Of a stretch of 64,000 nucleotides of DNA, positions 2,339 to 53,113 are shown piece after piece. The stretch's first letter is position 1; every line of letters begins with the position of its first letter. The position numbers and the translations under genes were made by a program. Below the pieces are notes generated by a model. That model ran no database searches and had not been told where the DNA came from. It was given only the letters and a program-made list of their open reading frames with translations. The stretch lies in IMG/VR virus record IMGVR_UViG_3300020165_000007, positions 124,001 to 188,000 of that record. One strand, written 5' to 3'.

Positions 2339-3088
2339 TTAACTATCTGATAAATTTTCTTTGATTGAGAGTGTTTTATCAATCAATTCATTTTTATTAT
2401 CGAACAGTTTTTGTATATATCCGTTTCTACGTAAAAATTTAAAAACTAAGTTTTCATAAGAGTATTCTCCTCCTTTTTCTAACCCACCACTTCTAAATTT
2501 TTTTATTTTGTCTTTAACCGAATCTAATTTTAATAAGGCTGAATCTAAATCGATTTCTTCTTCTACATCTTCTATCGTATTATCAATAATATCCATCCAA
2601 TTTTGAGATTTAGATTCTATCTTTTTCGTATCTATTATTACTTCTTCCGGTTTTGGTTGTTTCATCCATTCATTATAAAGAACTGAATAAACACCTGTCG
2701 ACATATGAGGTTCATTCATATCTTGAACATATAACTCAACTTCATATCCTTTAACAGTAATATCATGTTGTGAATTAAAAACCGTTCTCTTTAAGTTAAA
2801 TAAATCTTTAAATATTTCTTCTTGTTCTCCTGACTCTTTAAAATCATATATTATATGTAAGTCAATATCTGAATAGTCAGACCAGTTAAAATTAGCTAAT
2901 GAACCTGTCATAGTAATATCTTGAACAAAAATATCAAATCCCAAAAAATCAATAAACTCGTTTGCAATATCTAAAAGACCATCTCTTATTTCAGGTTTCA
3001 TTTTAGACTCTTCAACATTGTCGTAGTTATCCCATATTTCAGGATTAAGAGTATCCTTAACCAAAAAACTACTAATTATTTTATCCAT
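2339..3088 (-). CDS. Pol-beta superfamily nucleotidyltransferase-like protein
   Basis: TGSLANFNWSDYSDIDLH matches the GS...DxD motif; later acidic residue in VELYVQD. Confidence 0.75.
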   Translation of the reverse strand: MDKIISSFLVKDTLNPEIWDNYDNVEESKMKPEIRDGLLDIANEFIDFLGFDIFVQDITMTGSLANFNWSDYSDIDLHIIYDFKESGEQEEIFKDLFNLKRTVFNSQHDITVKGYEVELYVQDMNEPHMSTGVYSVLYNEWMKQPKPEEVIIDTKKIESKSQNWMDIIDNTIEDVEEEIDLDSALLKLDSVKDKIKKFRSGGLEKGGEYSYENLVFKFLRRNGYIQKLFDNKNELIDKTLSIKENLSDS

Positions 3089-3335
3089 CTTTATCTATTT
3101 TTTTATAATCAAACTTTTTACCTATTTCTTTATTAAAAAAACTTCCTTGTGATTCTGCCATTCTAAACTTAGTAAAGATAGAGTGAGGCACTTCACTATA
3201 TTCATATTGTATCTCACCTTTAAACGTCACTAAAAGTTTTTGTGTCGACGTATCATACTCCACAATCTTGACTGTTGAAGAGTCAATCTCACAGATTATC
3301 TTCTTACCTAATATTCTTTCTGTTTTAATCGACAT
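3081..3335 (-). CDS. KTSC domain protein
   Basis: SSTVKIVEYD...LLVTF...YEYSEVP...AESQGSFFNKEI pattern. Confidence 0.85.
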   Translation of the reverse strand: MSIKTERILGKKIICEIDSSTVKIVEYDTSTQKLLVTFKGEIQYEYSEVPHSIFTKFRMAESQGSFFNKEIGKKFDYKKIDKDG

Positions 3336-3834
3336 TACTATTGGATATTAATATATAAGAAATAAAATCGTTGTCTTCTCCCATTGTGAGCCTTTGAACC
3401 TTGTTTAAAAATCCACTAACCTTAAAGTCCTCATTACTTATTCTTAAATCTTCCGCCGCCGCTATTTCAGCATTATTCCTTGCCTTTTTCTTTGCAATTT
3501 CACGGTCCGTTGAGTCTGCAACACCAAAATATAAAGTTTCACCATTAACGTCTATTTTACCTTCTGATTTATTCGTGTCTCGAACATCCTGAATAATTTC
3601 ATCAATGGGTTTATTGTTATACTTTTTTACTTCTACTTCTACTTCTTCTTCATCACCGTCAAGTTTATCTTTGATATTATCGACAGTGTTTTTAATCGCC
3701 TCTTTACCTTTTTGGAAACCTTTCTTTATACCATCTCTTACACCTCTAAAAATTCCTTGTTCATCAAGCTCAGATTCGTTAATACCCATTAACTCACGAT
3801 TACGTTTTACTTCATTCAATATATCCTTATTCAT
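3325..3834 (-). CDS. Hypothetical protein with NEVxRxxxLM leader
   Basis: MNKDILNEVKRNRELMGINE; TATTTATA motif upstream. Confidence 0.7.
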   Translation of the reverse strand: MNKDILNEVKRNRELMGINESELDEQGIFRGVRDGIKKGFQKGKEAIKNTVDNIKDKLDGDEEEVEVEVKKYNNKPIDEIIQDVRDTNKSEGKIDVNGETLYFGVADSTDREIAKKKARNNAEIAAAEDLRISNEDFKVSGFLNKVQRLTMGEDNDFISYILISNSNVD

Positions 3835-3867: not shown

Positions 3868-3898
3868 AAAAACCCCTCACTTTTGATGAGGGGGTTTT
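3868..3898. terminator. Intrinsic terminator hairpin
   Basis: aaaacccctca...tgagggggtttt directly downstream of the 3900..4343 gene. Confidence 0.7.
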
Positions 3899-3899
3899 A

Positions 3900-4343
3900 T
3901 TAAGAGTTAAGTTTTTTAAGTTTATCCCTATATTTTATCGAAGATTCAAAATCCTGAGATTTTATAGACTCATCTAATTTAGTTTTAATTTCCTCAATCT
4001 TTTCTTTATTCGACTCAATTTTTTTGATTTGGTCTCGTATTTTAGCGGCTGTCTCATAATCTTGTATTTCTACCGCATCTGATAATTGGGTTTTTAAAGT
4101 AAAAGTTTCATCTGTTTCTACAGTTGTTGGTTCATCCGTATATTGATATAACGTTGTGACTTGATATGTACCATCATCAGAAATAAATGTTTCTTTTTTC
4201 CATTTACCGTTTTTATCATCTCCGTGTTCTACATTTTTTTTACCTTTAATATATAAAGGGTTTGATTTATATGACCCAATCCCGTCAAAAAGAGAGTCAA
4301 AATCTGAAAATAAGTCATTAAAATTAAAATTTCTACGTAACAT
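3900..4343 (-). CDS. Protein with two C-terminal UVR (UvrB/C) coiled-coil motifs, candidate ClpC adaptor
   Basis: LSDAVEIQDYETAAKIRDQIK and LDESIKSQDFESSIKYRDKLK; N-terminus resembles sHSP-type FNDLFSDFDSLF; divergent from clpC. Confidence 0.7.
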   Translation of the reverse strand: MLRRNFNFNDLFSDFDSLFDGIGSYKSNPLYIKGKKNVEHGDDKNGKWKKETFISDDGTYQVTTLYQYTDEPTTVETDETFTLKTQLSDAVEIQDYETAAKIRDQIKKIESNKEKIEEIKTKLDESIKSQDFESSIKYRDKLKKLNS

Positions 4344-4522
4344 TTTGTTTTTTTATTATTAGTTTATTAAATTTACATTTTTATAGTTAATATCGTACCA
4401 ACATATTAAATTAACTCTAAAACTGACATTATGTCAGGTAAAGTTTAAATGATATGTCACAATGTCAACACTTGATTTAATGGTATAATATATACTATAT
4501 TTGTATAAAATTATTTAAGATT

Positions 4523-6544
4523 ATGATAGAATCGGTAGACCCAAACGAAAAAGGAGGAGGAAAAAAGAAAAAAGAAGTTAGTAACTCCAGAACTCCTGTT
4601 CTAGATAATTTTTCTAGAGATTTAATTAAGTTAGCGTCGGAAGGTAAATTAGACCCTGTTGTAGGTCGAGAAGTAGAAATAACAAGGATTGCACAAATTC
4701 TTTCTAGAAGAAAGAAAAACAATCCTATTATTGTTGGTGAACCTGGATGTGGTAAAACTGCGATAGTGGAGGGTTTAGCTATGAGAATTTTTGAGGGAGA
4801 TTGTCCTCAAAATCTGTGTGATAAAAGAATCGTATCTTTAGATATGACTTCTATAGTCGCGGGAACAAAATATAGGGGTCAGTTTGAAGAAAGAATGAAA
4901 GTTATTTTAGATGAACTCCATGATAACCATGATATTGTAGTGTTTATTGATGAGATTCATACTATTATAGGTGCGGGTAATTCCTCAGGTTCATTAGACG
5001 CTTCCAATATATTTAAACCGGCACTAGCGAGGGGTGAAATTCAATGTATCGGAGCAACAACTCTTGATGAATACCGTGAAAATATAGAGAAAGACGGGGC
5101 TTTGGAGAGACGTTTTCAAAAGGTGATGGTTGATGGGTCTACACCTGAAGAAACTATGGTTATCTTAGAGAACTTAAAGTCTAGATATGAAGACCATCAT
5201 AAAGTATCGTATAGTTATGAATCATTAGAGGCTTGTGTTTCTTTATCAGGAAGATATGTTAATGATAGAGAATTCCCTGATAAAGCGATTGATGTTATGG
5301 ATGAGGTTGGGGCTAAGGCACAAATCAATGTTAAATTTCCTGAAATTATAGAGAAACTTAGAGAGGATGCTTTTAATATAAAAGAAAAGAAAATACAAGT
5401 CGTAAAAAGTCAGAGATATGAGGAAGCGGCTCAATTAAGAGATGAAGAGAAAAAGATTCTTTCTCGTCTTGAGTTTGAAAAAGAAAAATTCGAAAGTGAT
5501 AAGGATGAGAAAAGAAAAGAGATTACCGAAGAAATGGTTTATGAGGTAGTTTCTACTATGACTAAAATTCCATTGTCTAAATTAAATGCGGATGACAAAG
5601 AATCTTTATTAAAGTTAGAAAGCAATCTTAACAATTCTGTTATTGGACAAGAAGAGGCAGTCAAAACAATATCTAAGTCTATTAGAAGAAATAGGGTCGG
5701 TATTAAAGACCCTAATAGACCCATCGGTTCGTTTATCTTTTTAGGTTCTACAGGAATTGGTAAGACTCACTTAGCTAAACAATTAGCTAAAGAAATTTTC
5801 GGGGATGAGGAATCTTTGATTAGGGTAGATATGTCAGAATATCAAGAGAAGTACTCAATGAGTAGACTTATAGGTTCTCCTCCAGGGTATGTGGGATATG
5901 ACCAAGGAGGTCAATTAACTGAAGCAGTTAAAAATAAACCATATTCTGTGGTACTATTTGATGAGATTGAAAAGGCGAATAAAGATATTTTTTCAATTCT
6001 ACTTCAAATGATGGATGATGGTCATTTAACAGATTCGTTTGGTCGTAAGATTAATTTTAAAAATTGTCTTATTATAATGACCTCAAACTTAGGGGTTAAG
6101 AAATTACAAGATTTCGGTACCGGTGTTGGGTTTGACACTAAGACTCGTATGTCAAGTAACGAAGAAATGAAAAAGTCCTTACTACAAAAGGAACTTAAAA
6201 ATCACTTTACCCCTGAGTTTTTGAATCGTGTAGATGAAGTTGTAGTTTTTAATCCCCTTAAGGAAAACGAGGTGGAAAAAATTGTTGAAATTGAACTATC
6301 AAAACTTAATCGTAGATTAGTTAAGTTGGGTTATAAGGTATCCATTGACAATAAGGTTAAAAAGTTTTTGTCTGAGGTTGGGTTTGATGAGAAGTATGGA
6401 GCAAGACCTATAAAACGGGCAATTCAAGAAAAAATCGAGGATTTAATTTCAGAAGAAGTATTAAGAGGTAATATCGTAGAAGGTAAACCCTGTAAACTTA
6501 AAATGAAAGGTAAAGAAGAGGTTGTACTAATAAAGGGGAGATAA
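4523..6544 (+). CDS. clpC: ClpC-type AAA+ unfoldase lacking the N-terminal Clp-repeat domain
   Basis: Walker A GEPGCGKT and GSTGIGKT; Walker B VFIDE and LFDEIEK; UVR M-domain QRYEEAAQLRD; GYVGY pore loop; VGF ClpP-docking loop. Confidence 0.92.
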   Translation: MIESVDPNEKGGGKKKKEVSNSRTPVLDNFSRDLIKLASEGKLDPVVGREVEITRIAQILSRRKKNNPIIVGEPGCGKTAIVEGLAMRIFEGDCPQNLCDKRIVSLDMTSIVAGTKYRGQFEERMKVILDELHDNHDIVVFIDEIHTIIGAGNSSGSLDASNIFKPALARGEIQCIGATTLDEYRENIEKDGALERRFQKVMVDGSTPEETMVILENLKSRYEDHHKVSYSYESLEACVSLSGRYVNDREFPDKAIDVMDEVGAKAQINVKFPEIIEKLREDAFNIKEKKIQVVKSQRYEEAAQLRDEEKKILSRLEFEKEKFESDKDEKRKEITEEMVYEVVSTMTKIPLSKLNADDKESLLKLESNLNNSVIGQEEAVKTISKSIRRNRVGIKDPNRPIGSFIFLGSTGIGKTHLAKQLAKEIFGDEESLIRVDMSEYQEKYSMSRLIGSPPGYVGYDQGGQLTEAVKNKPYSVVLFDEIEKANKDIFSILLQMMDDGHLTDSFGRKINFKNCLIIMTSNLGVKKLQDFGTGVGFDTKTRMSSNEEMKKSLLQKELKNHFTPEFLNRVDEVVVFNPLKENEVEKIVEIELSKLNRRLVKLGYKVSIDNKVKKFLSEVGFDEKYGARPIKRAIQEKIEDLISEEVLRGNIVEGKPCKLKMKGKEEVVLIKGR

Positions 6545-6557
6545 TTTCTCCCCTTTT
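6533..6557 (+). terminator. Intrinsic terminator
   Basis: aaggggag-ataattt-ctcccctttt. Confidence 0.7.
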
Positions 6558-6558
6558 G

Positions 6559-6590
6559 TTTGGTTTAAAGTAAATAATTTAGTATATTTG
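6559..6590 (+). promoter_or_regulatory. Bacteroidota housekeeping-sigma promoter (-33 TTTG, -7 TAnnTTTG)
   Basis: TTTG 6559-62, 20-nt spacer, TATATTTG 6583-90. Confidence 0.8.
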
Positions 6591-6608
6591 TATACAAATC
6601 AACCACAA

Positions 6609-7679
6609 ATGAATAACGAACAACTTAATCGTCTCAAAGAAGTACTTTCAATCCCAACTAAAACCTATAAGGAAGATGGAATGGTAGACTATATTATTAA
6701 TGTTCTTGAGACGATTGACGGTGTAACGTATTACAATGACCCAATGAATAACGTTTACGCCACTAAAGGTACATTACCTGATGGTGAGTTTTATCCGATG
6801 TTTGTTGCACATACTGATACGGTTCATGAACTGGTTGAAGACATTGTTGTTGAGGAGGAGAATCTCGAAAAACCACCCACTTTTGGTCGAACGTTTACTG
6901 AAGAACTAAACTTATCTCTAAAGGGATACACTCCACAAGGGAATCCAACGGGAATCGGTGGTGACGATAAATGTGGTGTTTTCTTGGCACTCGAACTCCT
7001 TCGCACTTTGTCACATGTAAAGGTCGGTCTTTTCGTATCTGAAGAGACCGGATGTCACGGCTCTAAGGAGTGTGATGTTGAGTTCCTCAAGGATGTGGGT
7101 TATGCGATTCAATTTGACGCACCTGGAAATCATTTGGTTACCGAAGTTTGTTCGGGAATTCGTTTATTTGAGAGTAATGGTGAGTTCATTAAACGCATTA
7201 CCCCCATCTTTGAAAACTCTATGGGTGTATCTCCTTACCTTCAGTCACACCCATATACTGATGTCTCACAAATTAAACAAAAAGGTGATTTTTCTTGTAT
7301 CAACTTTTCTTGTGGTTATTACAACATGCATTCAACATCTGAATTTGTAGTTGTAAAAGATGTTGAAGATGCCCTAAAACTCGCTATTGGTGTTGTAAAT
7401 GAGCTTGGTTTGAATAAGTTTGGTTACACTTACATCAAACCTACATACGATTACTACGGTCAAGGTAGTTTATTCACTAGTTATGATATTGAGGATGATG
7501 ATTACGATTATGAATCAGTAGAATGGGAAGAAAGTGATAATCATTACTTCAACATCTCAGATGATTCAATTGAAATTGAAAGTAAAATTAATGGAAATAC
7601 TGTCACTTTAAATATGAAGGATATGGCAGATTTATATCTACTTATCCGTGAGCGTTTATTGGAAAACGAAGAGATTTAA
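6609..7679 (+). CDS. M20/M28-family zinc peptidase
   Basis: AHTDTVH, GGDDKCG, EETGCHGS and GYYNMH metal-ligand motifs; start at ATG 6609. Confidence 0.85.
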   Translation: MNNEQLNRLKEVLSIPTKTYKEDGMVDYIINVLETIDGVTYYNDPMNNVYATKGTLPDGEFYPMFVAHTDTVHELVEDIVVEEENLEKPPTFGRTFTEELNLSLKGYTPQGNPTGIGGDDKCGVFLALELLRTLSHVKVGLFVSEETGCHGSKECDVEFLKDVGYAIQFDAPGNHLVTEVCSGIRLFESNGEFIKRITPIFENSMGVSPYLQSHPYTDVSQIKQKGDFSCINFSCGYYNMHSTSEFVVVKDVEDALKLAIGVVNELGLNKFGYTYIKPTYDYYGQGSLFTSYDIEDDDYDYESVEWEESDNHYFNISDDSIEIESKINGNTVTLNMKDMADLYLLIRERLLENEEI

Positions 7680-9538
7680 AACGGGTCAAAAAGTGTGTAG
7701 TTGTTCAACAATTTAATTATTGTTGTCAACTTAGCACTACCTTTTTTTATTTCATTATCTTTATTAATTATTTCAAAATTAATTTTAGAGTTTTTTGGGT
7801 TAACCCCTGTAAATATTATAGAATCTTCACTTTCTGACGATTTAATTGCGTGAGGAGTATTAAGACCAAATTTATTATTTATATACTTTAATATTCTTCT
7901 ATACTCATTAACGTCTGACACTACATTATCATCAGATTCGACATCCGATAAAACATTTTCCAACAGATTTGTCATATCACTGTTAAACGAGTCATTAAAC
8001 ACATCCAAATCCTGATATTCATTTACACTATCCATAAAGTATGTGTCTAAGTCAATATTTTGTTGGATTACGTTCTCCAACACTTGCTCTGTAGACAAGT
8101 CTTTATTGTAATCTAAATTATCCTCGTAGATATCAATAAGTTTATCAATACTGATTTTATATTGACCAAAACAACCTTCATCGTCAACCTTTGTTAATCC
8201 TATTTCATCATAAAGATTACATATTTCATCTTCAATATATTTTATTACACCTTGGTGTATAGACCTGTCCTCGGCTTCGGAATACAAATAACCAAAATCT
8301 TCATATAATTTTGGTAATTTATTTTCTATAAATTTCGATACTTTTACGTCCCAATCACCGTCAGGTTTAATTTCACTACCATCAAACGCCTCTAACAACT
8401 CAGGTTCTATTATCTCAACAATAGAACGTAATATATCTATATGTTCAGGTGTTAATACATAAAGTGGGTAACCTTCCATCATATCGTCATTAAATCTTGA
8501 TGTCTCATAAAAAAAATCTCCATTAGGGTTTTCATATGACCATAGATAATAACCTATCGCATCTTCACCGACCTCATCCTCCATAAAGTCCAAATAATTC
8601 TTAAGTTCATTACTGAAATTAAAAATTGCGTTCTCACCATCAAACCTATCAAAGAAGTGAGATGTTAATGATTCATACATAGATGTCTTAGGGTTATTTT
8701 TTACTTTCTTTAGAGTTTCGTAGTCATCCCCACGTTCCGTCAGTTTATTAATCTCTTCCTTTATTGGTGCAAATCTTTCTAATAAAAAACTAAATTTTTC
8801 CCCGTGGTCCTGTTGATTGTATACCTCAGGTGTGCCGTTACCATGAGGTACAAGTAATGCCATTTTACCGTATGTTCTGTCTGAAGATTTTTTATCTATA
8901 ATGTAATATAGTTTACCTCTTGATGTATATCTGTTAAAATAGTCGTCGTTATCAGTACTGGTGGTACACCATTTAGTACTTGCTCCGTAGTAACATGATG
9001 ATTTATGTGATAATGGACGTATTATTAAAAATCTATCGTTTTCATAAACTCTATCTACTTCTTTTTTTACTTCTTTTTCAGTCCTTATCTCATCTAAATA
9101 ATCTTCGTACTTATTAACAAAACGAAATAAATCGTGAATGGTATCAAACGAGGTAATGTCTTTTGGTTTTGACCTTATCTTTTTTTCTGTACTTTCACTA
9201 CTAAAATTTCCTTCTATATTTAAGATATTAAACATATTATCAACCTTTTCAGGTGATAATCTTTCAACAATATCATGATACTTTTTAATATTGACCCATA
9301 TAATACTTGCGACTGAAATTGGGTCCCCTCCTCCTACAACTGAAGAAGTGGGTTTATTAATTTCATCTATAAATTTTTTAACACCCCATTCAGAATACTT
9401 TTTAGTTAAGCTTGGGTCGTTATTTATAATTATTTCGGCATATTTTATCGCCTCGTCACCTAACGGTTCAAGTTGATTTCGGAACTTATCTATTATACGC
9501 TCCTTTTTACCTTCTAATAATAGAGTTATAAACTTCAT
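7676..9538 (-). CDS. Large hypothetical protein with a G-x-x-T-K-W-C motif domain (possibly PcfJ-like)
   Basis: SCYYGASTKWCTTS...YFNRY...LYYIIDK; leader MKFITLLLEG. Confidence 0.6.
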   Translation of the reverse strand: MKFITLLLEGKKERIIDKFRNQLEPLGDEAIKYAEIIINNDPSLTKKYSEWGVKKFIDEINKPTSSVVGGGDPISVASIIWVNIKKYHDIVERLSPEKVDNMFNILNIEGNFSSESTEKKIRSKPKDITSFDTIHDLFRFVNKYEDYLDEIRTEKEVKKEVDRVYENDRFLIIRPLSHKSSCYYGASTKWCTTSTDNDDYFNRYTSRGKLYYIIDKKSSDRTYGKMALLVPHGNGTPEVYNQQDHGEKFSFLLERFAPIKEEINKLTERGDDYETLKKVKNNPKTSMYESLTSHFFDRFDGENAIFNFSNELKNYLDFMEDEVGEDAIGYYLWSYENPNGDFFYETSRFNDDMMEGYPLYVLTPEHIDILRSIVEIIEPELLEAFDGSEIKPDGDWDVKVSKFIENKLPKLYEDFGYLYSEAEDRSIHQGVIKYIEDEICNLYDEIGLTKVDDEGCFGQYKISIDKLIDIYEDNLDYNKDLSTEQVLENVIQQNIDLDTYFMDSVNEYQDLDVFNDSFNSDMTNLLENVLSDVESDDNVVSDVNEYRRILKYINNKFGLNTPHAIKSSESEDSIIFTGVNPKNSKINFEIINKDNEIKKGSAKLTTIIKLLNNYTLFDPF

Positions 9539-10962
9539 TAGTCATATGCTGCACATCCTATACCACCACTGTCTTCAAAAAATCCGACACCACCACCGCT
9601 CTTAATAAAATTAAAAATCTTACGGTTTCTCCCTCCTGTTGGTTGTGTATCACTTGTTATTTTAATATCCCATTCACCAATTTTATCATCAGTACCAGGT
9701 TCACTCTTTTCTGTATCATAATCAAATTTAACAGCCAATTGTATTATACAATATTTATACTGTTCATATTCATTTGGTGAACTGTGTGGTTCTTGCCCAT
9801 TAAATGTTCTGTCACCCTCTTGTTTAAATGAATTAGGGTCACCACCACCATCAGAAAATTGATTTGGACTTGGTGGATTTGGTCCTGATGAACCGTCACC
9901 ATTTCTACCATTAGAATTTAAAGTGACATTTACTGTACTTATGTCGGGTACTAAAGAACTTAATTCATTAACTATGTAACTATATACACTTTCAGCTCTC
10001 TCTTGAGAAAGTTCTTTAAAATTCATTTGCTGAGCCTCTCCTGTATTTCTGTATCTTGACGCTGATGTCGCAATTACAAATGGGTAGTTTTCACCGTCTA
10101 CTTTATTCGCCACTGAAACTTTAGCATCTGGAAATTGTTTTAGAAAATCGGTAATATCACCTTTAAATTTTTTAGTCCACTCAACGACGCCTTGACCCAC
10201 TCTTGTTGAGTTGTTAGGGAATGGTTCACCTTCAGTTTTCTTGTCTATTGAGTGATTAACTTTAACCGCGGGTATTACAGTTTCATCTTTTTCTTCTTTT
10301 GATAACTTACCAGGTATTAGACGTATTGATTTAATATTTTTTCTACATTCACCTATATCAGGAGTACTTTCATCTTTCTTTTCAGGGTATTTTTTAGTAC
10401 ACCAATCGATAAAATATTGAATGAACCCTTCTTTATTTTCTTCTGTCATAGGAGGAACATCGGCACCTGATTGTCTTTTGTCTTTTCCTTTTACACCCTT
10501 ACTACCAGTTTTACAAGCGTTAAGTGATGACTCATTAAAGTCCGGATTTAACGAATCTTCGCCGAGAGGGAATCCGAATTTTACTTGACCTAAACGGTCA
10601 CCGTTTTGGTCTTCAATATTTCTTAACTCTTTTACAGAGTTACGATATTGGCTTTCATCTTTAAAATATGATTTAGGGATGTAATTGTAACTACTGTATA
10701 GATATTGTCCATCAACACCTCTTCTTGTTGTTGTTTTTTCCGGTAACTTTTCAGACTCTAATTCTGAAACAGGGAATCTATATTTGAAATAATATCTTGG
10801 TGAACAACTGAAATCATCACCAGCACTTTCCCAATAAATTTTACTCTTTTCATCTAATAATGAGACAAACACTCTTTCTATATTGTCAGTTTGTTCTAAA
10901 ACTAACTCCAACCCCATAATTTGTCTCATGCGGTTAACTTCATTTATAATATTACGCTTCAT
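9538..10962 (-). CDS. Leader-bearing protein with OmpA-C-like segment
   Basis: MKRNIINEVNRMRQIMGL; NFKELSQERAESVYSYI resembles the N..LS..RA..V motif. Confidence 0.55.
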   Translation of the reverse strand: MKRNIINEVNRMRQIMGLELVLEQTDNIERVFVSLLDEKSKIYWESAGDDFSCSPRYYFKYRFPVSELESEKLPEKTTTRRGVDGQYLYSSYNYIPKSYFKDESQYRNSVKELRNIEDQNGDRLGQVKFGFPLGEDSLNPDFNESSLNACKTGSKGVKGKDKRQSGADVPPMTEENKEGFIQYFIDWCTKKYPEKKDESTPDIGECRKNIKSIRLIPGKLSKEEKDETVIPAVKVNHSIDKKTEGEPFPNNSTRVGQGVVEWTKKFKGDITDFLKQFPDAKVSVANKVDGENYPFVIATSASRYRNTGEAQQMNFKELSQERAESVYSYIVNELSSLVPDISTVNVTLNSNGRNGDGSSGPNPPSPNQFSDGGGDPNSFKQEGDRTFNGQEPHSSPNEYEQYKYCIIQLAVKFDYDTEKSEPGTDDKIGEWDIKITSDTQPTGGRNRKIFNFIKSGGGVGFFEDSGGIGCAAYD

Positions 10963-39841: not shown

Positions 39842-39924
39842 GGAGGGATGCCAGAGTGGTTAATGGAGCAGTTTGCTAAACTGTCGTCGGTAACGACGCG
39901 TGGGTTCGAATCCCACTCCCTCCG
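39842..39924 (+). tRNA. tRNA-Ser(GCT)
   Basis: GGAGGGA/TCCCTCC acceptor, loop TTGCTAA, long variable arm, TTCGAAT T-loop. Confidence 0.93.
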
Positions 39925-40097
39925 CAAAAATTAAAAAATGAACTTTAAATATAACATATCAAACAATACAGAACATTTTGAATACACGGTGTATTTGACT
40001 GAAGAAGAATTCAAATCAATTAATTTCGAAAATTACTCAACTACATTTGGTTAAATGAATAATAAGTCATATATTTGTAGAACAAAACAAATAAACA

Positions 40098-40352
40098 ATG
40101 TCAAAAGAAAAACTGTATCGTAGTTCAAATGGTGACTACCTTTACTTGTTCAACTGGAAATGTGGTGGGTTCAATGACGTGTGGGCACCCAATAAGCGTG
40201 AAGCTTATAAGCGTGTAATGAAGGAGCGTAAGGAGTCGGAGGAAAAATACCCTAATCATTCTAAACTTCGTCCTGACTATGATTCAATGCGTCGTTGCAC
40301 TTATAGTGAATATCAGGAACAAAATAAAATGGGTTGGCTACTATCAATCTAA
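40098..40352 (+). CDS. Small hypothetical protein
   Basis: Promoter TTTG 40046 / TATATTTG 40070. Confidence 0.75.
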   Translation: MSKEKLYRSSNGDYLYLFNWKCGGFNDVWAPNKREAYKRVMKERKESEEKYPNHSKLRPDYDSMRRCTYSEYQEQNKMGWLLSI

Positions 40353-40358
40353 TTATAT

Positions 40359-40432
40359 GACTTCGTAGCTCAGTTGGTTAGAGCATCTCACTTTTAATGA
40401 GAGGGTCCTGGGTTCGAGTCCCAGCGGGGTTA
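40359..40432 (+). tRNA. tRNA-Lys(TTT)
   Basis: Cloverleaf; TCTCA-CTTTTAA-TGAGA. Confidence 0.92.
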
Positions 40433-40521
40433 CTTCATCTACCTAAAATTATATCAACATGAAATATTAGCAATAACAAACAAATCAGCTTAATTTAAAA
40501 TTTATAACTAATGTAAACAAA

Positions 40522-40712
40522 GACATTCTCTGAGTAGGGTAAGAATAAAGGAGAGTGTTATAACAAAACTTCTTGCGTGAGTTGGTAAGGTAGCAGCGCA
40601 AGTCTTGTCAGACGCTTACCAAGTCATGGACGAGTGGTGTAAGAAGGTTCCGTTCAAGTTAATGAGAGCGGGTAGACCCAAACAATGGTGGAGTACCAAT
40701 CAAAATCTCCAC
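40522..40712 (+). ncRNA. Candidate structured ncRNA between tRNA-Lys and tRNA-Leu
   Basis: GC-richer spacer with nested helices and no listed ORF. Confidence 0.45.
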
Positions 40713-40718
40713 TGAAAT

Positions 40719-40800
40719 ACCGATGTGGCGTAATTGGTAGCCGCGACAGTCTTAGGAACTGTTGTCGAAAGACGTGTAGGTTCGAGTCCTATCATCGGTA
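40719..40800 (+). tRNA. tRNA-Leu(TAG)
   Basis: ACAGT-CTTAGGA-ACTGT with variable arm. Confidence 0.92.
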
Positions 40801-40807
40801 CTTATAT

Positions 40808-40882
40808 GGTGACTATAGTTCAGTTGGTTAGAACGTCTGATTGTGGTTCAGAAGGTCGTCGGTTCGACTCCGATTAGTCACC
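40808..40882 (+). tRNA. tRNA-His(GTG)
   Basis: Encoded G-1, C73 and loop TTGTGGT. Confidence 0.93.
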
Positions 40883-40890
40883 CATTATAA

Positions 40891-40960
40891 GGTCAGATGT
40901 CCGATTGGAAGGTGTAGGTACGCAATACCTATAACGGTGGTTCGAATCCATCTCTGACCT
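40891..40960 (+). tRNA. tRNA-Cys(GCA) with atypical anticodon loop
   Basis: GGTCAGA/TCTGACC acceptor, U73, TAGGT-ACGCAAT-ACCTA. Confidence 0.82.
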
Positions 40961-40984
40961 CAATTTGAATGAAAACTGTAAATT

Positions 40985-41263
40985 ATGTATGACCCAAAAC
41001 AAGACCCTGCCTTTACAAATAACCCTTATCTAACAGATTATGAATTTAATTATGATTTAATGATGGACCCATGTAGTAACCCAAATCCACCTTCATGGTG
41101 TGAAGACGGTACTGGAGGTCCTTGTAATAACCCTGACCACGGACCTTATTGTGATGGTGTTCACGCAGTACCATGTGATGGTGGAATTATGATGTTATTT
41201 CTTTCTGCAATATTTGGGGTATCATTAATCAAAAAAAGATTTGTTTTATCGAGATACATGTAG
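40985..41263 (+). CDS. Small Cys/Pro-rich protein with PID-CTERM-like sorting tail
   Basis: C-terminal VPCDGG, hydrophobic helix, then KKR. Confidence 0.6.
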   Translation: MYDPKQDPAFTNNPYLTDYEFNYDLMMDPCSNPNPPSWCEDGTGGPCNNPDHGPYCDGVHAVPCDGGIMMLFLSAIFGVSLIKKRFVLSRYM

Positions 41264-41290
41264 TATATTTGTATTCGTTATTTAACATAT

Positions 41291-41364
41291 GCACCCCTAG
41301 CTCAGTTGGATAGAGCATCTGCCTTCTAAGCAGACGGTCACAGGTTCGAATCCTGTGGGGTGTA
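41291..41364 (+). tRNA. tRNA-Arg(TCT)
   Basis: TCTGC-CTTCTAA-GCAGA; own promoter at 41240-41271. Confidence 0.93.
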
Positions 41365-41431
41365 CAAAAAATCTACAATAGATTTGGTAGTTCAAAAAAG
41401 TTACTTATCTTTGTAGTGTTCTTTACAGAAT

Positions 41432-41517
41432 GCCCGGATGGTGGAAGTGGTAGACACGACAGACTTAAAATCTGTTTCGCCGAACGGTGAGTGTGGGTTC
41501 GAGTCCCACTCCGGGTA
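41432..41517 (+). tRNA. tRNA-Leu(TAA)
   Basis: ACAGA-CTTAAAA-TCTGT; promoter at 41383-41413. Confidence 0.93.
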
Positions 41518-41606
41518 CTAAGATAAAGTTCTTTGATATGATGGTATAGTAAATAAGTAAAACTTTCGCTGATGACCCCTCTGCGACAAAAAAGGGGAAC
41601 CAATAC

Positions 41607-41680
41607 GGGGACGTAGCTCAATTGGTTAGAGCATCAAGCTTATATCTTGAAGGTCGGAGGTTCGATTCCTCTCGTCCCTA
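41607..41680 (+). tRNA. tRNA-Ile(TAT)
   Basis: TCAAG-CTTATAT-CTTGA, A73, intact D and T arms. Confidence 0.85.
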
Positions 41681-41698
41681 CTAAAACTATAATAAAAT

Positions 41699-42121
41699 GG
41701 GGGGTCGTCTCTTCGTCCTGATGTGTGGCGACCTCCCGATATAACAAATCGCGTGTGAGGTGAATATGGGGCTTCGGCCCCTACCTCACACACAACAAGC
41801 CGTGTAGTCGTGAAAGGAGTGGTGACTGGAAGCGACCTGAGTACTAGAAAACTCAGACCTGTGTGAAAGCAATCTGTGGGTTGGATGCGCCGACTAAGTA
41901 GTATCTTTTGATACCTTACCCTTATTCTAGTTTGGGTGTCGTTCGGAGAGTAGTGGGTTCGAATCCCATCACATTGGCTAAATTTAAATCACTAAACCCT
42001 CCTACTGACAAGGAGGGGAGGTAAAGATGAACGGGGTATGTCAGAATCCTCAGTAATCGGTGTAACGGTTCGAATCCGTCAGGGGTATTGTCCTTGTAAC
42101 TATCGGAGTATACACCACCTC
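41699..42121 (+). ncRNA. Candidate large structured ncRNA (or two to three adjacent RNAs) with two T-loop hairpins
   Basis: Many helices, a UUCG tetraloop, two GGTTCGAATCC arms without a tRNA cloverleaf, and a kissing-loop complement. Confidence 0.65.
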
Positions 42122-42125
42122 AATT

Positions 42126-42201
42126 GCCACTATAGCTTAGTTGGTAGAGCAGCTGATTTGTAATCAGCAGGTCGGCGGTTCGAGTCCGTCTAGTGGCTCC
42201 A
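42126..42201 (+). tRNA. tRNA-Thr(TGT)
   Basis: GCTGA-TTTGTAA-TCAGC; CCA encoded. Confidence 0.94.
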
Positions 42202-42212
42202 TATAAAAAAGA

Positions 42213-42292
42213 GGGGGTATCGCATAGTGGCAATTGCGGCTGACTGTAAATCAGCTCCTTCGGGTTCGGAGGTTCGAGTCCTTCTACCCCCA
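42213..42292 (+). tRNA. tRNA-Tyr(GTA)
   Basis: GCTGA-CTGTAAA-TCAGC with variable arm. Confidence 0.93.
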
Positions 42293-42295
42293 CAT

Positions 42296-42369
42296 TCTCC
42301 CTTAGCTCAGTTGGTTAGAGCATCTGACTGTTAATCAGAGGGTCCTTGGTTCGAGCCCAAGAGGGAGAG
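42296..42369 (+). tRNA. tRNA-Asn(GTT)
   Basis: TCTGA-CTGTTAA-TCAGA, G73. Confidence 0.93.
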
Positions 42370-42448
42370 CGGCGCCTGAAGACTGAGAGAAGGGGAGTGA
42401 CTATTAATTTAGTCCTCCTCTTTTTGTATTTATAAATAAAATAATAAA

Positions 42449-51294: not shown

Positions 51295-51368
51295 GCGCCC
51301 ATAGCTCAGTTGGTTAGAGCATCCGACTCATAATCGGCAGGTCCTAGGTTCAAGTCCTAGTGGGCGCA
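51295..51368 (+). tRNA. tRNA with CAT anticodon (likely Ile2/lysidine type; elongator Met possible)
   Basis: CCGA-CTCATAA-TCGG; C4-G69 and C5-G68 pairs; no initiator features. Confidence 0.85.
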
Positions 51369-51381
51369 CAAACACATTACG

Positions 51382-52335: not shown

Positions 52336-52420
52336 GGAGAGATGGCAGAGCGGTCGAATGCGACGGTCTTGAAAACCGTTGTACCGAAAGGTACCGGGGG
52401 TTCGAATCCCTCTCTCTCCA
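52336..52420 (+). tRNA. tRNA-Ser(TGA)
   Basis: ACGGT-CTTGAAA-ACCGT; GTACC-GAAA-GGTAC variable arm. Confidence 0.93.
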
Positions 52421-52441
52421 CATAATTTAAAAATTAAAAAA

Positions 52442-53113
52442 ATGGAATACGGAGAAGATTTTAAAAAGTATGCAATGAGTGACCATAATATCTCATCATT
52501 TAATATGGATTATTATGAAAAACAAATTAAAGGTTCACTCACACCATATATTCTTGAAGAAAGGGAAATGAGAGTTACTCAGATGGATATATTCTCTAGA
52601 TTAATGAGGGACCGTGTATTGTGGGTGGCCGGTGGTGTTGATGACCGTATGTCAACAGTGGTCCAAGCTCAACTAATGTATCTTGACTCTGTAGATAATT
52701 TAGATATTACAATGCATATCGATTCTCCAGGTGGTTCAGTTAAATCTGGTTTGTCTATGGTAGATGTGATGCAGTATATTAAATCGGACATTGTTACTGT
52801 AAATACGGGAATGGCAGCTTCTATGGGTTCAGTACTATTAGGTGCGGGGACTAAAGGAAAAAGGTCGTCACTAAGATTTTCAAAGACAATGTTACACCAA
52901 TCTAGCGGAGGGGCTTATGGAAATATTCAAGACGCTAGAATTAATTTTGAAGAGTGGGAAAAAGTTAATAAAATTCTTTTTGAATTACTCGGAGAGTTCT
53001 GTGGTAAAGACCCAAAACAGGTTATTGAAGACTCCTCAAGGGACTTTTGGATGGACGCTAATGAAGCACTTGAGTATGGTATTATCGATGAGGTGATAAA
53101 AGTTAAGTCGTAA
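52442..53113 (+). CDS. clpP: ATP-dependent Clp protease proteolytic subunit
   Basis: DIFSRLMRDR, IDSPGGSV, GMAASMG (catalytic Ser), MLHQ (His), RDFWM (Asp); start at MEYGEDF. Confidence 0.95.
   Translation: MEYGEDFKKYAMSDHNISSFNMDYYEKQIKGSLTPYILEEREMRVTQMDIFSRLMRDRVLWVAGGVDDRMSTVVQAQLMYLDSVDNLDITMHIDSPGGSVKSGLSMVDVMQYIKSDIVTVNTGMAASMGSVLLGAGTKGKRSSLRFSKTMLHQSSGGAYGNIQDARINFEEWEKVNKILFELLGEFCGKDPKQVIEDSSRDFWMDANEALEYGIIDEVIKVKS

What the first reader, a model, noticed from the sequence alone, without database searches (positions are those of the whole stretch)
3900..6544. N-domain-less ClpC divergently paired with a twin-UVR protein
Seen: ClpC begins almost directly at the first AAA module (TPVLDNFSRDL), so it lacks the adaptor-binding N-domain, but it keeps the UVR M-domain and the VGF loop. 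The head-to-head gene has two UVR motifs and an aromatic sHSP-like N-terminus. Established: ClpC activity is gated by M-domain contacts and adaptors, and McsA carries a UVR motif. Inference: the small protein is a dedicated activator or adaptor that docks by UVR-UVR coiled coil, giving the phage a protease insulated from host adaptors.
Basis: partly seen in the sequence, partly recalled or inferred. Interest (0 to 1): 0.68.

Follow-up and report, generated by a model that had tools for sequence, protein, structure and literature searches.

The report
Phage ClpC with stress-wired UVR partner
A marine jumbo phage of Bacteroidota carries a ClpC unfoldase that has lost its regulatory N-domain, and beside it a phage-only two-UVR-motif protein that swaps places with small heat-shock proteins in related phages and sits under the same DNA operator as the hosts' own hsp20 genes, which makes it a candidate stress-induced helper of the phage protease.

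Summary
ORF 4523-6544(+) is a ClpC that aligns to solved ClpC only from residue ~150. It lacks the N-domain but keeps both AAA+ modules, a UVR-type M-domain (tip Tyr299) and the VGF loop. ORF 3900-4343(-) has two Pfam UVR motifs and a short sHSP-like aromatic N-terminus.

In 80 related IMG/VR loci the divergent slot beside ClpC holds the twin-UVR gene in 41, a true HSP20 in 15 and neither in about 22. No locus has both. The UVR state looks ancestral and was lost or swapped repeatedly, so it is an accessory partner, not an obligate one.

New finding: a palindrome, TGACA-N3-TGTCA, usually paired, accompanies the slot gene (39/41 UVR, 12/14 sHSP, 1/24 empty). The same motif with the same geometry precedes hsp20 in Flavobacteriales genomes.

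The nearest cellular ClpCs are full-length Bacteroidota proteins. Phage ClpP is variable while the VGF loop is invariant, so the system is not insulated from the host.

Best reading (confidence 0.4): a host-stress-induced co-chaperone or adaptor that uses M-domain-like UVR hairpins to engage or de-repress the N-less ClpC. Docking is not shown; the complex prediction gave no verdict.

The parts
3900..4343 (-). Twin-UVR protein gene (147 aa). Predicted layout: N-terminal aromatic arm, three-stranded beta-meander, then helix / long helix / helix.
   Evidence: ORF. Pfam UVR x2, E 4.8e-14. AlphaFold model pLDDT 74, helices 79-92, 96-128 and 132-146 at pLDDT about 88-90. Family alignment A1.
4272..4343 (-). 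N-terminal aromatic arm (res 1-24, MLRRNFNFNDLFSDFDSLFDGIGS), resembling sHSP N-terminal regions
   Evidence: N-terminal HMM enriches sHSP N-termini, 14 of top 40 hits, P 4.6e-16. Low model confidence.
4140..4244 (-). Beta-meander (res 34-68); variable or deleted in some family members
   Evidence: Strands E34-43, E46-55, E61-68, pLDDT 70-81. Indel-rich block in A1.
4014..4097 (-). UVR motif 1 (res 83-110; tip IQDY96ETAAKIR103D104)
   Evidence: PF02151 35.4 bits. F/Y96, R103 and D104 invariant or nearly so. Near-identical to the UVR of host BFN-UVR proteins.
3906..4007 (-). UVR motif 2 (res 113-146; tip SQDF132ESSIKYR139D140)
   Evidence: PF02151 25.4 bits. F132, E133, R139 and D140 conserved.
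3873..3893 (.). Bidirectional terminator-like hairpin after the twin-UVR gene
   Evidence: Terminator scan, both strands.
4424..4436 (.). Operator 1: exact palindrome TGACATTATGTCA, centred 87 nt upstream of the UVR-gene ATG
   Evidence: Only exact copy in the 64 kb window. The only intergenic copy of 3 in the 270 kb genome. Linked to slot occupancy: 39/41 UVR, 12/14 sHSP, 1/24 empty.
4455..4467 (.). Operator 2: TGTCACAATGTCA (1 mismatch), 31 bp from operator 1 and 5 bp upstream of the ClpC -33 TTG
   Evidence: Pair spacings cluster at about 21 and 31 bp in phage loci and 20-24 bp at host hsp20.
4472..4503 (+). Probable Bacteroidota-type ClpC promoter: TTG (4472-4474), 21 nt, TATATTTG (4496-4503; TAnnTTTG)
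   Evidence: Sequence read. TAnnTTTG lies within 90 nt upstream of ClpC in 23 of 69 distinct loci, clustered 23-42 nt from the ATG, against 0.93 per kb background. The consensus itself is from general knowledge.
4523..6544 (+). N-domain-less ClpC (673 aa): D1, M-domain, D2, D2-small
   Evidence: phrog_4871, E 4.5e-243. At least 598 IMG/VR relatives of the same length.
5324..5551 (+). M-domain (res 268-343), with the UVR motif at 5378-5458 and tip Tyr299 (5417-5419), the equivalent of S. aureus ClpC F436
   Evidence: Pfam UVR 286-312. Alignment to 6em9. Y/F invariant in 80 ClpCs. Role of F436 from PMC12583610.
6125..6133 (+). VGF ClpP-docking loop tip (res 535-537)
   Evidence: Motif position. 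G536 and F537, and the flanking F531, G532 and G534, are invariant in alignment A3.
6532..6556 (+). Terminator-like hairpin overlapping the ClpC stop codon
6588..7679 (+). M42/M28/M20-type metallopeptidase; adjacent to ClpC in nearly all related loci, though its orientation varies
   Evidence: Pfam Peptidase_M42 E 1.5e-6. phrog_4191 E 2e-36. Synteny.
52442..53113 (+). Phage ClpP (ORF opens at 52379; probable ATG at 52442), 48 kb from ClpC
   Evidence: PF00574 194 bits. Present in the own genome, G002, G003 and G004; absent from G001 and G005.
2339..3335 (-). Conserved upstream block: nucleotidyltransferase-like gene (2339-3088) and KTSC-domain gene (3081-3335). Context only.
   Evidence: Pfam and PHROG hits. 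Present in nearly all loci.

Best explanation
The locus is a phage proteostasis module built around a Bacteroidota-derived ClpC that has lost its N-domain. The gene beside it fills an accessory 'co-chaperone slot'. Related phages put either a canonical HSP20 or this twin-UVR protein there, and in both cases the slot gene brings a pair of TGACA-N3-TGTCA operators like those in front of Flavobacteriales hsp20 genes. The slot gene is therefore probably switched by an unidentified host factor that controls hsp20, in other words by host stress (inferred). The twin-UVR protein most likely acts as an sHSP-replacing adaptor. Its aromatic N-terminal arm and beta-meander would hold non-native or target proteins. 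Its two UVR hairpins copy the ClpC M-domain tip, including the aromatic residue, and would contact ClpC M-domains. That contact would compete with the head-to-head M-domain pairing that keeps an engineered N-less ClpC proteolytically silent, releasing active hexamers that work with phage or host ClpP. Shown here: gene structures, loss of the N-domain, synteny and mutual exclusivity with sHSP, the operator link to host hsp20, phage-only distribution, and presence in RNA libraries. Inferred: stress induction, substrate holding, M-domain contact and activation.
For: N-less ClpC with intact M-domain tip and VGF loop. The nearest cellular relatives are full-length Bacteroidota ClpCs: 77 of 80 have 155-229 extra N-terminal residues and the other 3 are cut by contig ends. 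Slot occupancy: 41 UVR, 15 sHSP, about 22 neither, never both. The two are also exclusive genome-wide in 6 near-complete genomes. UVR is basal on the ClpC tree, with at least 6 changes forced. The operator accompanies the slot gene: 39/41 UVR, 12/14 sHSP, 1/24 empty, background about 0.03 per kb. The same motif lies upstream of hsp20 in Flavobacteriales: 13/33 at up to 1 mismatch, 26/33 at up to 2, and 0 in about 100 kb of flanks. Distance and pair spacing match. The UVR hairpins resemble the phage ClpC's own M-domain (35% identity) and keep F/Y96 and F132. Literature: engineered delta-N ClpC binds ClpP but stays inactive until M-domain contacts are broken by F436A (PMC12583610); stand-alone UVR proteins are enriched on trapped plastid CLPC1 (PMC8889267); a phage adaptor-like protein for ClpC exists in SPO1, Gp53 (PMC6873191). 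RNA-library contigs cover the whole UVR ORF and parts of ClpC but not the intergenic region.
Against: There is no direct or computational support for UVR to M-domain binding; the complex job gave no answer. The ClpC M-domain is equally conserved with a UVR partner, an sHSP or nothing, with no covariation. ClpC persists without any slot gene in many lineages, including a complete genome, so ClpC does not need the partner. A canonical sHSP, which has no UVR motif, can replace it, so the shared function may be substrate holding rather than ClpC docking. The regulator and the inducing signal are unknown. RNA evidence comes from assembled contigs of metatranscriptome libraries, which cannot exclude DNA carry-over.
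Confidence: 0.4

Rival explanations
1. The twin-UVR protein is a stand-alone holdase and a non-crystallin analogue of an sHSP. The two UVR hairpins serve only for self-assembly into oligomers, replacing the alpha-crystallin dimer and the IXI motif. It sits beside ClpC only because both belong to a stress or proteostasis gene neighbourhood, and there is no direct ClpC contact.
For: Mutual exclusivity with true HSP20 in the same slot under the same operator. Shared N-terminal arm motif. No M-domain covariation. No support from the complex prediction (uninformative). UVR domains are known self- and hetero-associating helical hairpins (UvrB/UvrC, general knowledge; legend text in PMC8889267).
Against: The hairpins copy the ClpC M-domain tip motif in detail, aromatic residue included. 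UVR proteins are selectively trapped on CLPC1 in plastids. The slot is always the one directly abutting clpC.
Confidence: 0.3
2. The twin-UVR protein is an anti-host effector. It is a UVR decoy that binds host UVR-bearing proteins (host full-length ClpC, UvrB/UvrC of nucleotide excision repair, or the BFN-UVR nuclease) to deregulate or block them during infection.
For: Flavobacteriales genomes carry BFN_dom+UVR proteins whose UVR is nearly identical to motif 1, plus UvrB- and ClpC-sized hits. SPO1 Gp53 shows that phages do target host ClpC. The phage ClpC can do without the protein.
Against: An anti-host effector would not be expected to alternate with an sHSP, or to sit under the host hsp20-type operator, which suggests stress-responsive rather than programmed early expression. 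Its constant position abutting the phage clpC argues for a link to the phage enzyme.
Confidence: 0.15
3. The slot is merely a recombination hot spot next to clpC where unrelated morons land, and the twin-UVR protein has no functional tie to proteostasis.
For: Other unrelated small ORFs also occupy the region: the FQ family, a 169-aa ORF in the window, and 145-157 aa ORFs in L044 and L074.
Against: The two dominant occupants are both proteostasis-linked, share one specific operator and one N-terminal motif, and are strictly exclusive of each other.
Confidence: 0.1

Closest known systems
ClpC of Firmicutes and Bacteroidota, and the engineered delta-N ClpC of S. aureus (PMC12583610)
   Same: Two AAA+ modules, a short UVR-type M-domain with an aromatic tip residue, a VGF ClpP-docking loop; about 52% identity to S. 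aureus and B. subtilis ClpC and 55-60% to Bacteroidota ClpC.
   Different: This is a natural protein with no N-domain, so it has no site for MecA, McsB, pArg or ClpS-type adaptors. It is phage-encoded and a core gene of a jumbo-phage clade. The laboratory delta-N construct is inactive unless M-domain contacts are broken; how the phage enzyme is activated is unknown.
MecA, McsA/McsB and SPO1 Gp53 (ClpC adaptors and adaptor-like proteins)
   Same: Small partner proteins proposed or shown to activate ClpC. McsA has a C-terminal UVR-like motif, and that is the best NCBIfam hit of the small protein (E 1.2e-8).
   Different: No MecA domain. No Cys or zinc-finger motifs as in McsA (34.9 bits against a cut-off of 210). 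Known adaptors need the ClpC N-domain, which is missing here. Any docking would have to be through the M-domain only.
Plastid UVR-domain CLPC1 interactors (CLPF, UVR2-4 = DUF151/BFN+UVR, EXE1/2; PMC8889267) and bacterial BFN-UVR proteins
   Same: Stand-alone UVR motifs on proteins that associate with ClpC-type chaperones in vivo. Host Flavobacteriales BFN-UVR proteins carry a nearly identical UVR.
   Different: Those have a single UVR fused to other domains. This protein has two tandem UVR hairpins sharing one long helix, plus an sHSP-like arm. UVR-mediated docking has not been demonstrated mechanistically even in plants.
Small heat-shock proteins (HSP20/alpha-crystallin)
   Same: Same genomic slot, same operator, a similar aromatic N-terminal arm and a similar size.
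   Different: No alpha-crystallin domain (no Pfam hit; hhalign probability 5.6%). No C-terminal IXI motif.
bS21-encoding Bacteroidetes jumbo phages (PMC9723584) and 'moraphages' (PMC12619734)
   Same: The genome encodes bS21. Complete relatives are 290-321 kb. Core genes include a 'ClpA/chaperone ATPase' and a peptidase. Some members carry HSP20. Hosts are predicted to be Flavobacteriia.
   Different: Those papers list the chaperone genes only as annotations. In the text I searched, neither describes the missing N-domain, the twin-UVR family, the slot alternation or the operator.

Membership tests
ClpC (class I Hsp100/Clp ATPase) | Two AAA+ modules with Walker A/B motifs and pore loops | tested here: met
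   Pfam AAA and AAA_2. GEPGCGKT at 72, DE at 143-144, KYR at 116-118, GSTGIGKT at 408, DE at 480-481, GYVG at 455.
ClpC (class I Hsp100/Clp ATPase) | Short coiled-coil M-domain with a UVR motif and an aromatic tip residue | tested here: met
   Pfam UVR 286-312. Y299 aligns with S. aureus F436.
ClpC (class I Hsp100/Clp ATPase) | ClpP-docking (I/L/V)GF loop in D2 | tested here: met
   VGF at 535-537; G536 and F537 invariant in A3.
ClpC (class I Hsp100/Clp ATPase) | Clp_N repeat N-domain (adaptor and pArg docking) | tested here: not met
   The alignment to ClpC structures starts at chain residue 150. No Clp_N Pfam hit. Bacterial relatives have 155-229 extra residues.
ClpC (class I Hsp100/Clp ATPase) | Curated NCBIfam equivalog score | tested here: not met
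   Best are the ClpB model at 823.7 against a cut-off of 1232 and the ClpA model at 733 against 993. The shortfall is expected for a truncated protein.
HSP20 / alpha-crystallin sHSP (for the small protein) | Alpha-crystallin domain (PF00011) | tested here: not met
   No Pfam hit. hhalign A1 against A2 gives probability 5.6%.
HSP20 / alpha-crystallin sHSP (for the small protein) | Aromatic N-terminal arm | tested here: met
   N-terminal HMM enrichment, P 4.6e-16. The motif is short and individual scores are weak.
HSP20 / alpha-crystallin sHSP (for the small protein) | C-terminal I-X-I/V anchoring motif | tested here: not met
   The protein ends ...KLKKLNS. The phage sHSPs end ...ISLL.
McsA (arginine-kinase activator) | N-terminal CXXC zinc-binding motifs and the NCBIfam cut-off | tested here: not met
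   No cysteine in the sequence. 34.9 bits against a cut-off of 210; only the C-terminal UVR segment matches.
MecA-type adaptor | MecA domain | tested here: not met
   No such Pfam or NCBIfam hit at E up to 0.01.
UVR-domain ClpC-associated proteins (CLPF, UVR2-4, EXE) | UVR motif (PF02151) | tested here: met
   Two motifs, E 4.8e-14.
UVR-domain ClpC-associated proteins (CLPF, UVR2-4, EXE) | Physical association with a ClpC chaperone | tested here: inconclusive
   The complex prediction gave no answer. Genomic adjacency only.
bS21-encoding Bacteroidetes jumbo phages / moraphage-like clade | Phage bS21 gene; ClpA-like ATPase and peptidase as core genes; Bacteroidota host signal | tested here: met
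   bS21 E 4.4e-11. ClpC plus peptidase synteny. Nearest ClpCs and the hsp20 operator are Bacteroidota. TerL and MCP phylogeny not tested.

The most novel reading that the evidence does not exclude
The twin-UVR protein is an M-domain decoy. Under host proteotoxic stress the host's hsp20 regulator switches it on. Its two M-domain-tip mimics then cap ClpC M-domains, dissolve inactive head-to-head ring dimers of the naturally N-less ClpC, and hand over clients held by its sHSP-like arm. That would be the first N-domain-independent, M-domain-directed ClpC adaptor. It would also be the first phage chaperone gene wired into a so far undescribed Bacteroidota hsp20 regulon defined by paired TGACA-N3-TGTCA operators.
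Probability: 0.25. Interest if true: 0.8.

Novelty: new variant of a known kind. Interest (0 to 1): 0.62.

Why it matters
ClpC regulation is currently understood as an interplay of the N-domain, the M-domain and adaptors, and deregulated ClpC is a drug-target concept. Here nature has deleted the N-domain in a large phage clade, and possibly twice independently. The same clade offers a built-in comparative experiment: one ClpC with a UVR partner, an sHSP partner or no partner. That makes it possible to test directly how an N-less ClpC is kept in check and switched on, and whether UVR motifs are generic ClpC-docking tags, as plastid trapping data hint. Separately, the paired TGACA-N3-TGTCA operator gives a concrete handle on hsp20 regulation in Flavobacteriales. 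I found no description of that regulation. It also shows a phage borrowing the operator, which links phage proteostasis genes to the stress state of the host.

Tried and rejected
- **Complex prediction.** ClpC residues 24-350 with the full twin-UVR protein, both with family alignments, scored ipSAE 0.10 and 0.07 against a mark of 0.32. The verdict was 'no answer', which is not evidence either way.
- **Foldseek of the small-protein model against PDB.** Best E 8e-3, TM about 0.25, on RadD. Uninformative.
- **Profile-profile comparison of the UVR family with the sHSP family.** No homology. The idea that the whole protein is a diverged sHSP is rejected; only the N-terminal arm is alike.
- **tblastn of the small protein against 50,697 phage records.** No match. 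The huge phages LR745206 and LR756502 have an N-less ClpC but no UVR neighbour.
- **Scan of genome contigs with the phage sHSP alignment.** No confirmed relatives, because the patterns were too specific.
- **Word search with a phage sHSP.** Returned only phage-clade sHSPs, so it gave no route to host genes.
- **Other two exact palindromes in the phage genome.** Both lie inside ORFs and are taken as chance.
- **Regulator gene next to host hsp20.** None is conserved, so the factor is unidentified. The literature search for the operator found nothing.
- **PDB 8XON (696 aa).** It comes from a Clp-machinery structure paper. I did not read that paper, so whether it is an N-terminally truncated construct or a natural N-less ClpC is untested. 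I do not use it as a precedent.
- **M-domain covariation with partner state.** None seen.
- **Large representative-protein search.** Not run, because it was costly. The phage-only distribution rests.
Full report
**What the window is.** The window is bases 124001-188000 of a 270 kb IMG/VR virus record estimated 88% complete. It has about 32% GC and 12 tRNA genes. The genome encodes ribosomal protein bS21, and complete relatives with terminal repeats are 321 kb. The locus DNA is held by marine, seawater, estuary and sediment metagenomes from about 15 studies. This places the phage among the bS21-encoding, Bacteroidetes-infecting jumbo phages (PMC9723584). It also fits the 'moraphage' description, whose core genes include a 'ClpA' ATPase and a putative peptidase (PMC12619734).

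**Check of the observation.** The ORF at 4523-6544(+) encodes 673 aa with Pfam AAA, AAA_lid_9, UVR (residues 286-312), AAA_2 and ClpB_D2-small. Against solved structures it aligns as query 14-665 to S. aureus ClpC 150-800 (E 2.7e-223) and similarly to B. subtilis ClpC from residue 145. The whole N-domain is therefore missing, and only a 23-residue Lys-rich leader precedes TPVLDNF. Walker motifs, pore loops and the VGF loop (535-537) are present and invariant across 44 relatives. The ORF at 3900-4343(-) encodes 147 aa with two Pfam UVR stretches (E 4.8e-14; residues 83-110 and 113-146). Its AlphaFold model (pLDDT 74) shows a short N-terminal helix, a three-stranded beta-meander, and a confident helix / long helix / helix unit. 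That unit is two UVR hairpins sharing one central helix.

**Origin of the ClpC.** The 80 best cellular relatives (55-60% identity) are nearly all from Bacteroidota. Of these, 77 have ORFs of 837-930 aa with 155-229 residues ahead of the phage start, and the other three are cut by contig ends. At least 598 IMG/VR contigs carry a ClpC of about 650-720 aa. The truncation is therefore a fixed, phage-specific state. On a quick tree the jumbo-phage ClpCs form one clade (support 100). The N-less ClpCs of two 635-642 kb phages nest among bacterial sequences instead (support 82-88), which hints at independent loss of the N-domain but does not prove it.

**Synteny.** In 80 related loci the conserved order is nucleotidyltransferase, KTSC protein, an optional 'FQ' protein, a variable slot, then divergently ClpC, followed by an M42-type peptidase.
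- The slot holds a homolog of the twin-UVR protein in 41 loci. In 40 of these it lies 65-210 bp from ClpC.
- It holds a protein that Pfam recognises as HSP20 (E about 1e-14) in 15 loci.
- It holds neither in about 22 loci.
- No locus has both.

The exclusivity holds genome-wide in near-complete genomes. The window's genome, G003, G004 and G005 have the UVR protein and no HSP20. G002 has HSP20 and no UVR protein. G001 (complete, 321 kb) has neither. On the ClpC tree rooted with the huge-phage sequences, the basal groups all carry the UVR gene, and well-supported branches force at least 6 changes of the UVR state and at least 3 of the sHSP state. The pair is conserved and probably ancestral, but it is dispensable and interchangeable with an sHSP.

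**A shared operator.** The 179-bp intergenic region contains TGACATTATGTCA (4424-4436) and TGTCACAATGTCA (4455-4467). The first is the only exact TGACA-N3-TGTCA in the window. The whole phage genome has three exact copies, and the other two lie inside ORFs.

| Loci | Palindrome (up to 1 mismatch) within 260 bp upstream of ClpC |
|---|---|
| UVR slot | 39 of 41 |
| sHSP slot | 12 of 14 |
| Empty slot | 1 of 24 |

Background elsewhere in these loci is 0.02-0.04 per kb. The element therefore belongs to the slot gene, whichever family occupies it.

I then sampled 81 Flavobacteriales genomes plus 5 named ones and fetched 33 hsp20 loci. The 250 bp upstream of hsp20 holds the palindrome at up to 1 mismatch in 13 of 33 and at up to 2 mismatches in 26 of 33, usually as a pair. 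There were no hits at up to 1 mismatch in about 100 kb of flanking DNA. The geometry agrees: site centres lie a median of 99 nt (phage UVR), 96.5 nt (phage sHSP) and 101 nt (host hsp20) upstream of the start codon. Pair spacings are about 21 or 31 bp in the phages and 20-24 bp in the hosts. Bacterial clpC loci do not carry the element. No regulator gene is conserved next to host hsp20, and I found no paper describing the element.

My inference is that an unidentified host factor controlling hsp20 also controls the phage slot gene. The second operator ends 5 bp before a TTG-N21-TATATTTG promoter of Bacteroidota type in front of ClpC, so ClpC may be influenced as well. ClpC in empty-slot phages lacks the element.

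**N-terminal arm.** Profile-profile comparison finds no homology between the UVR and sHSP families. However, an HMM of residues 1-24 of the UVR family ranks sHSP N-termini in 14 of its top 40 non-family hits among 2,777 ORFs, of which 48 are sHSPs (P 4.6e-16). All of these align near the N-terminus, within the first ~30 residues. Host sHSPs begin in the same style (M.LIKR....F..lFDDFF).

**Distribution of the twin-UVR family.**
- The word search found 69 relatives, all from metagenomes, on contigs up to about 311 kb, with only automatic names.
- The nearest ESM Atlas clusters (53, 67 and 183 members) are 100% viral.
- There is no match in 50,697 deposited phage records.
- In 81 Flavobacteriales genomes the family profile hits only single UVR motifs inside larger proteins.

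The best of those host hits are ~200-aa BFN_dom+UVR proteins. Their UVR (AVSIEDYEQAAKLRDQIKK) is almost the same as motif 1 of the phage protein (AVEIQDYETAAKIRDQIKK). They are the bacterial counterparts of plant UVR2-4, which are among the proteins most enriched on substrate-trapped CLPC1, together with EXE1/2 and CLPF (PMC8889267).

**Mechanistic frame from the literature.** In S. aureus, deleting the ClpC N-domain yields planar hexamers that bind ClpP. They pair head-to-head through M-domain tips and show no proteolysis. Adding F436A at the tip gives a hyperactive, less selective and toxic enzyme (PMC12583610). F436 lies in the UVR motif (AQEFENAANLRD). The phage ClpC has SQRYEEAAQLRD, so the aromatic residue is retained (Y299), and it is Y or F in all 80 relatives. 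Each UVR hairpin of the small protein carries the same motif with the aromatic residue (Y96, F132; nearly invariant). The region is 35% identical to the phage ClpC's own M-domain. A protein presenting two M-domain-tip mimics is thus a plausible competitor of M-domain pairing, which is the step that limits the activity of an N-less ClpC. This is inference, because the one complex prediction allowed returned no verdict.

**Limits on 'a protease insulated from the host'.** ClpP (52442-53113) is present in the window's genome and in G002-G004 but absent from G001 and G005, both at least 99% complete. The VGF loop is nevertheless invariant. In some lineages the phage ClpC must therefore use host ClpP or act without a peptidase. 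Losing the N-domain does remove the known docking site of MecA, McsB, pArg and ClpS-type adaptors, but the partner gene appears to be wired to a host regulator.

**Expression.** Four metatranscriptome runs from three studies hold pieces of the locus as Logan contigs.
- In X15 one 554-nt contig (3795-4348, no mismatches) spans the entire twin-UVR ORF.
- X16 and the DNase-treated X18 cover parts of the twin-UVR ORF.
- ClpC pieces occur in all four runs.
- None of the listed contig pieces spans 4349-4475 (36 further pieces were not shown) and depth there is near zero.

This fits two divergent transcripts, but assembled contigs cannot prove transcription, strand or level.

**Verdict.** The sequence facts are right. 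The 'dedicated UVR-UVR activator' reading is a reasonable but unproven mechanism, and it must be widened. The twin-UVR protein is an accessory, sHSP-interchangeable and probably stress-regulated partner of a core N-less ClpC. I rate the adaptor / de-repressor model at 0.4, a ClpC-independent holdase at 0.3, an anti-host UVR decoy at 0.15 and a functionless hot-spot insert at 0.1. 

Noticed in passing
window 3325-3834(-), 9538-10962(-); L096 2516-2770; slot ORFs in L044, L048 and L074: Unrelated phage ORFs share an N-terminal motif of the type MK(K/R).I..L(T)E.DL..(I/M)V.R...E (for example MNKDILNEVKRNRELMGINE, MKRNIINEVNRMRQIMGLE, MKIIKLTEGDLVEMIQQVISE). It could be a targeting or packaging signal.
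   Followed up: no
L178-L210 (Flavobacteriales hsp20 loci) and window 4424-4467: Paired TGACA-N3-TGTCA palindromes about 100 nt upstream of hsp20 define a candidate hsp20 operator in Flavobacteriales. No regulator gene is conserved nearby, and I found no description in the searched literature.
   Followed up: partly
L001 4887-6992, L002 4872-6995, L003 5001-6974: Huge phages of 484-642 kb also encode N-domain-less ClpCs with no UVR neighbour. L001 and L002 nest among full-length Bacteroidota ClpCs, apart from the jumbo-phage clade, which suggests a second, independent loss of the N-domain (support 82-88 only).
   Followed up: partly
L211 699-1295(-), L212 262-870(+): Flavobacteriales encode ~200-aa BFN_dom (DUF151)+UVR proteins whose UVR motif is almost identical to motif 1 of the phage protein. 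Their plant homologues UVR2-4 are CLPC1-trap interactors.
   Followed up: partly
window 6588-7679(+): An M42/M28/M20-type metallopeptidase is adjacent to ClpC in nearly all related loci, though its orientation flips between lineages. It may finish off peptides released by ClpCP.
   Followed up: partly
window 52336-53113: ClpP follows directly after a tRNA-Ser gene and lies 48 kb from ClpC. It is absent from 2 of 6 near-complete related genomes although the ClpC VGF loop is invariant.
   Followed up: yes
L034 5591-5935(-) and relatives (FQ family); window 3325-3834(-): A ~112-aa family with the motif FQREGWTEKDLE.PPYYP, with no Pfam hit, sits variably between the KTSC gene and the slot. The window has a different 169-aa ORF in that position.
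   Followed up: no
window 39842-42370, 51295-51369: A cluster of 10 tRNA genes, plus tRNA-Met and tRNA-Ser further on. This is typical of jumbo phages.
   Followed up: no
G000:C1:117239-117394 (outside the window): A phage-encoded ribosomal protein bS21 gene (E 4.4e-11), which ties the genome to the bS21-encoding Bacteroidetes phages described in 2022.
   Followed up: yes
window 4523-4591 (ClpC residues 1-23): The short leader that replaces the N-domain begins with a conserved MIES.D (M1 and D6 invariant in 44 sequences), followed by a Lys-rich linker. It is a possible docking or degron-like element.
   Followed up: no
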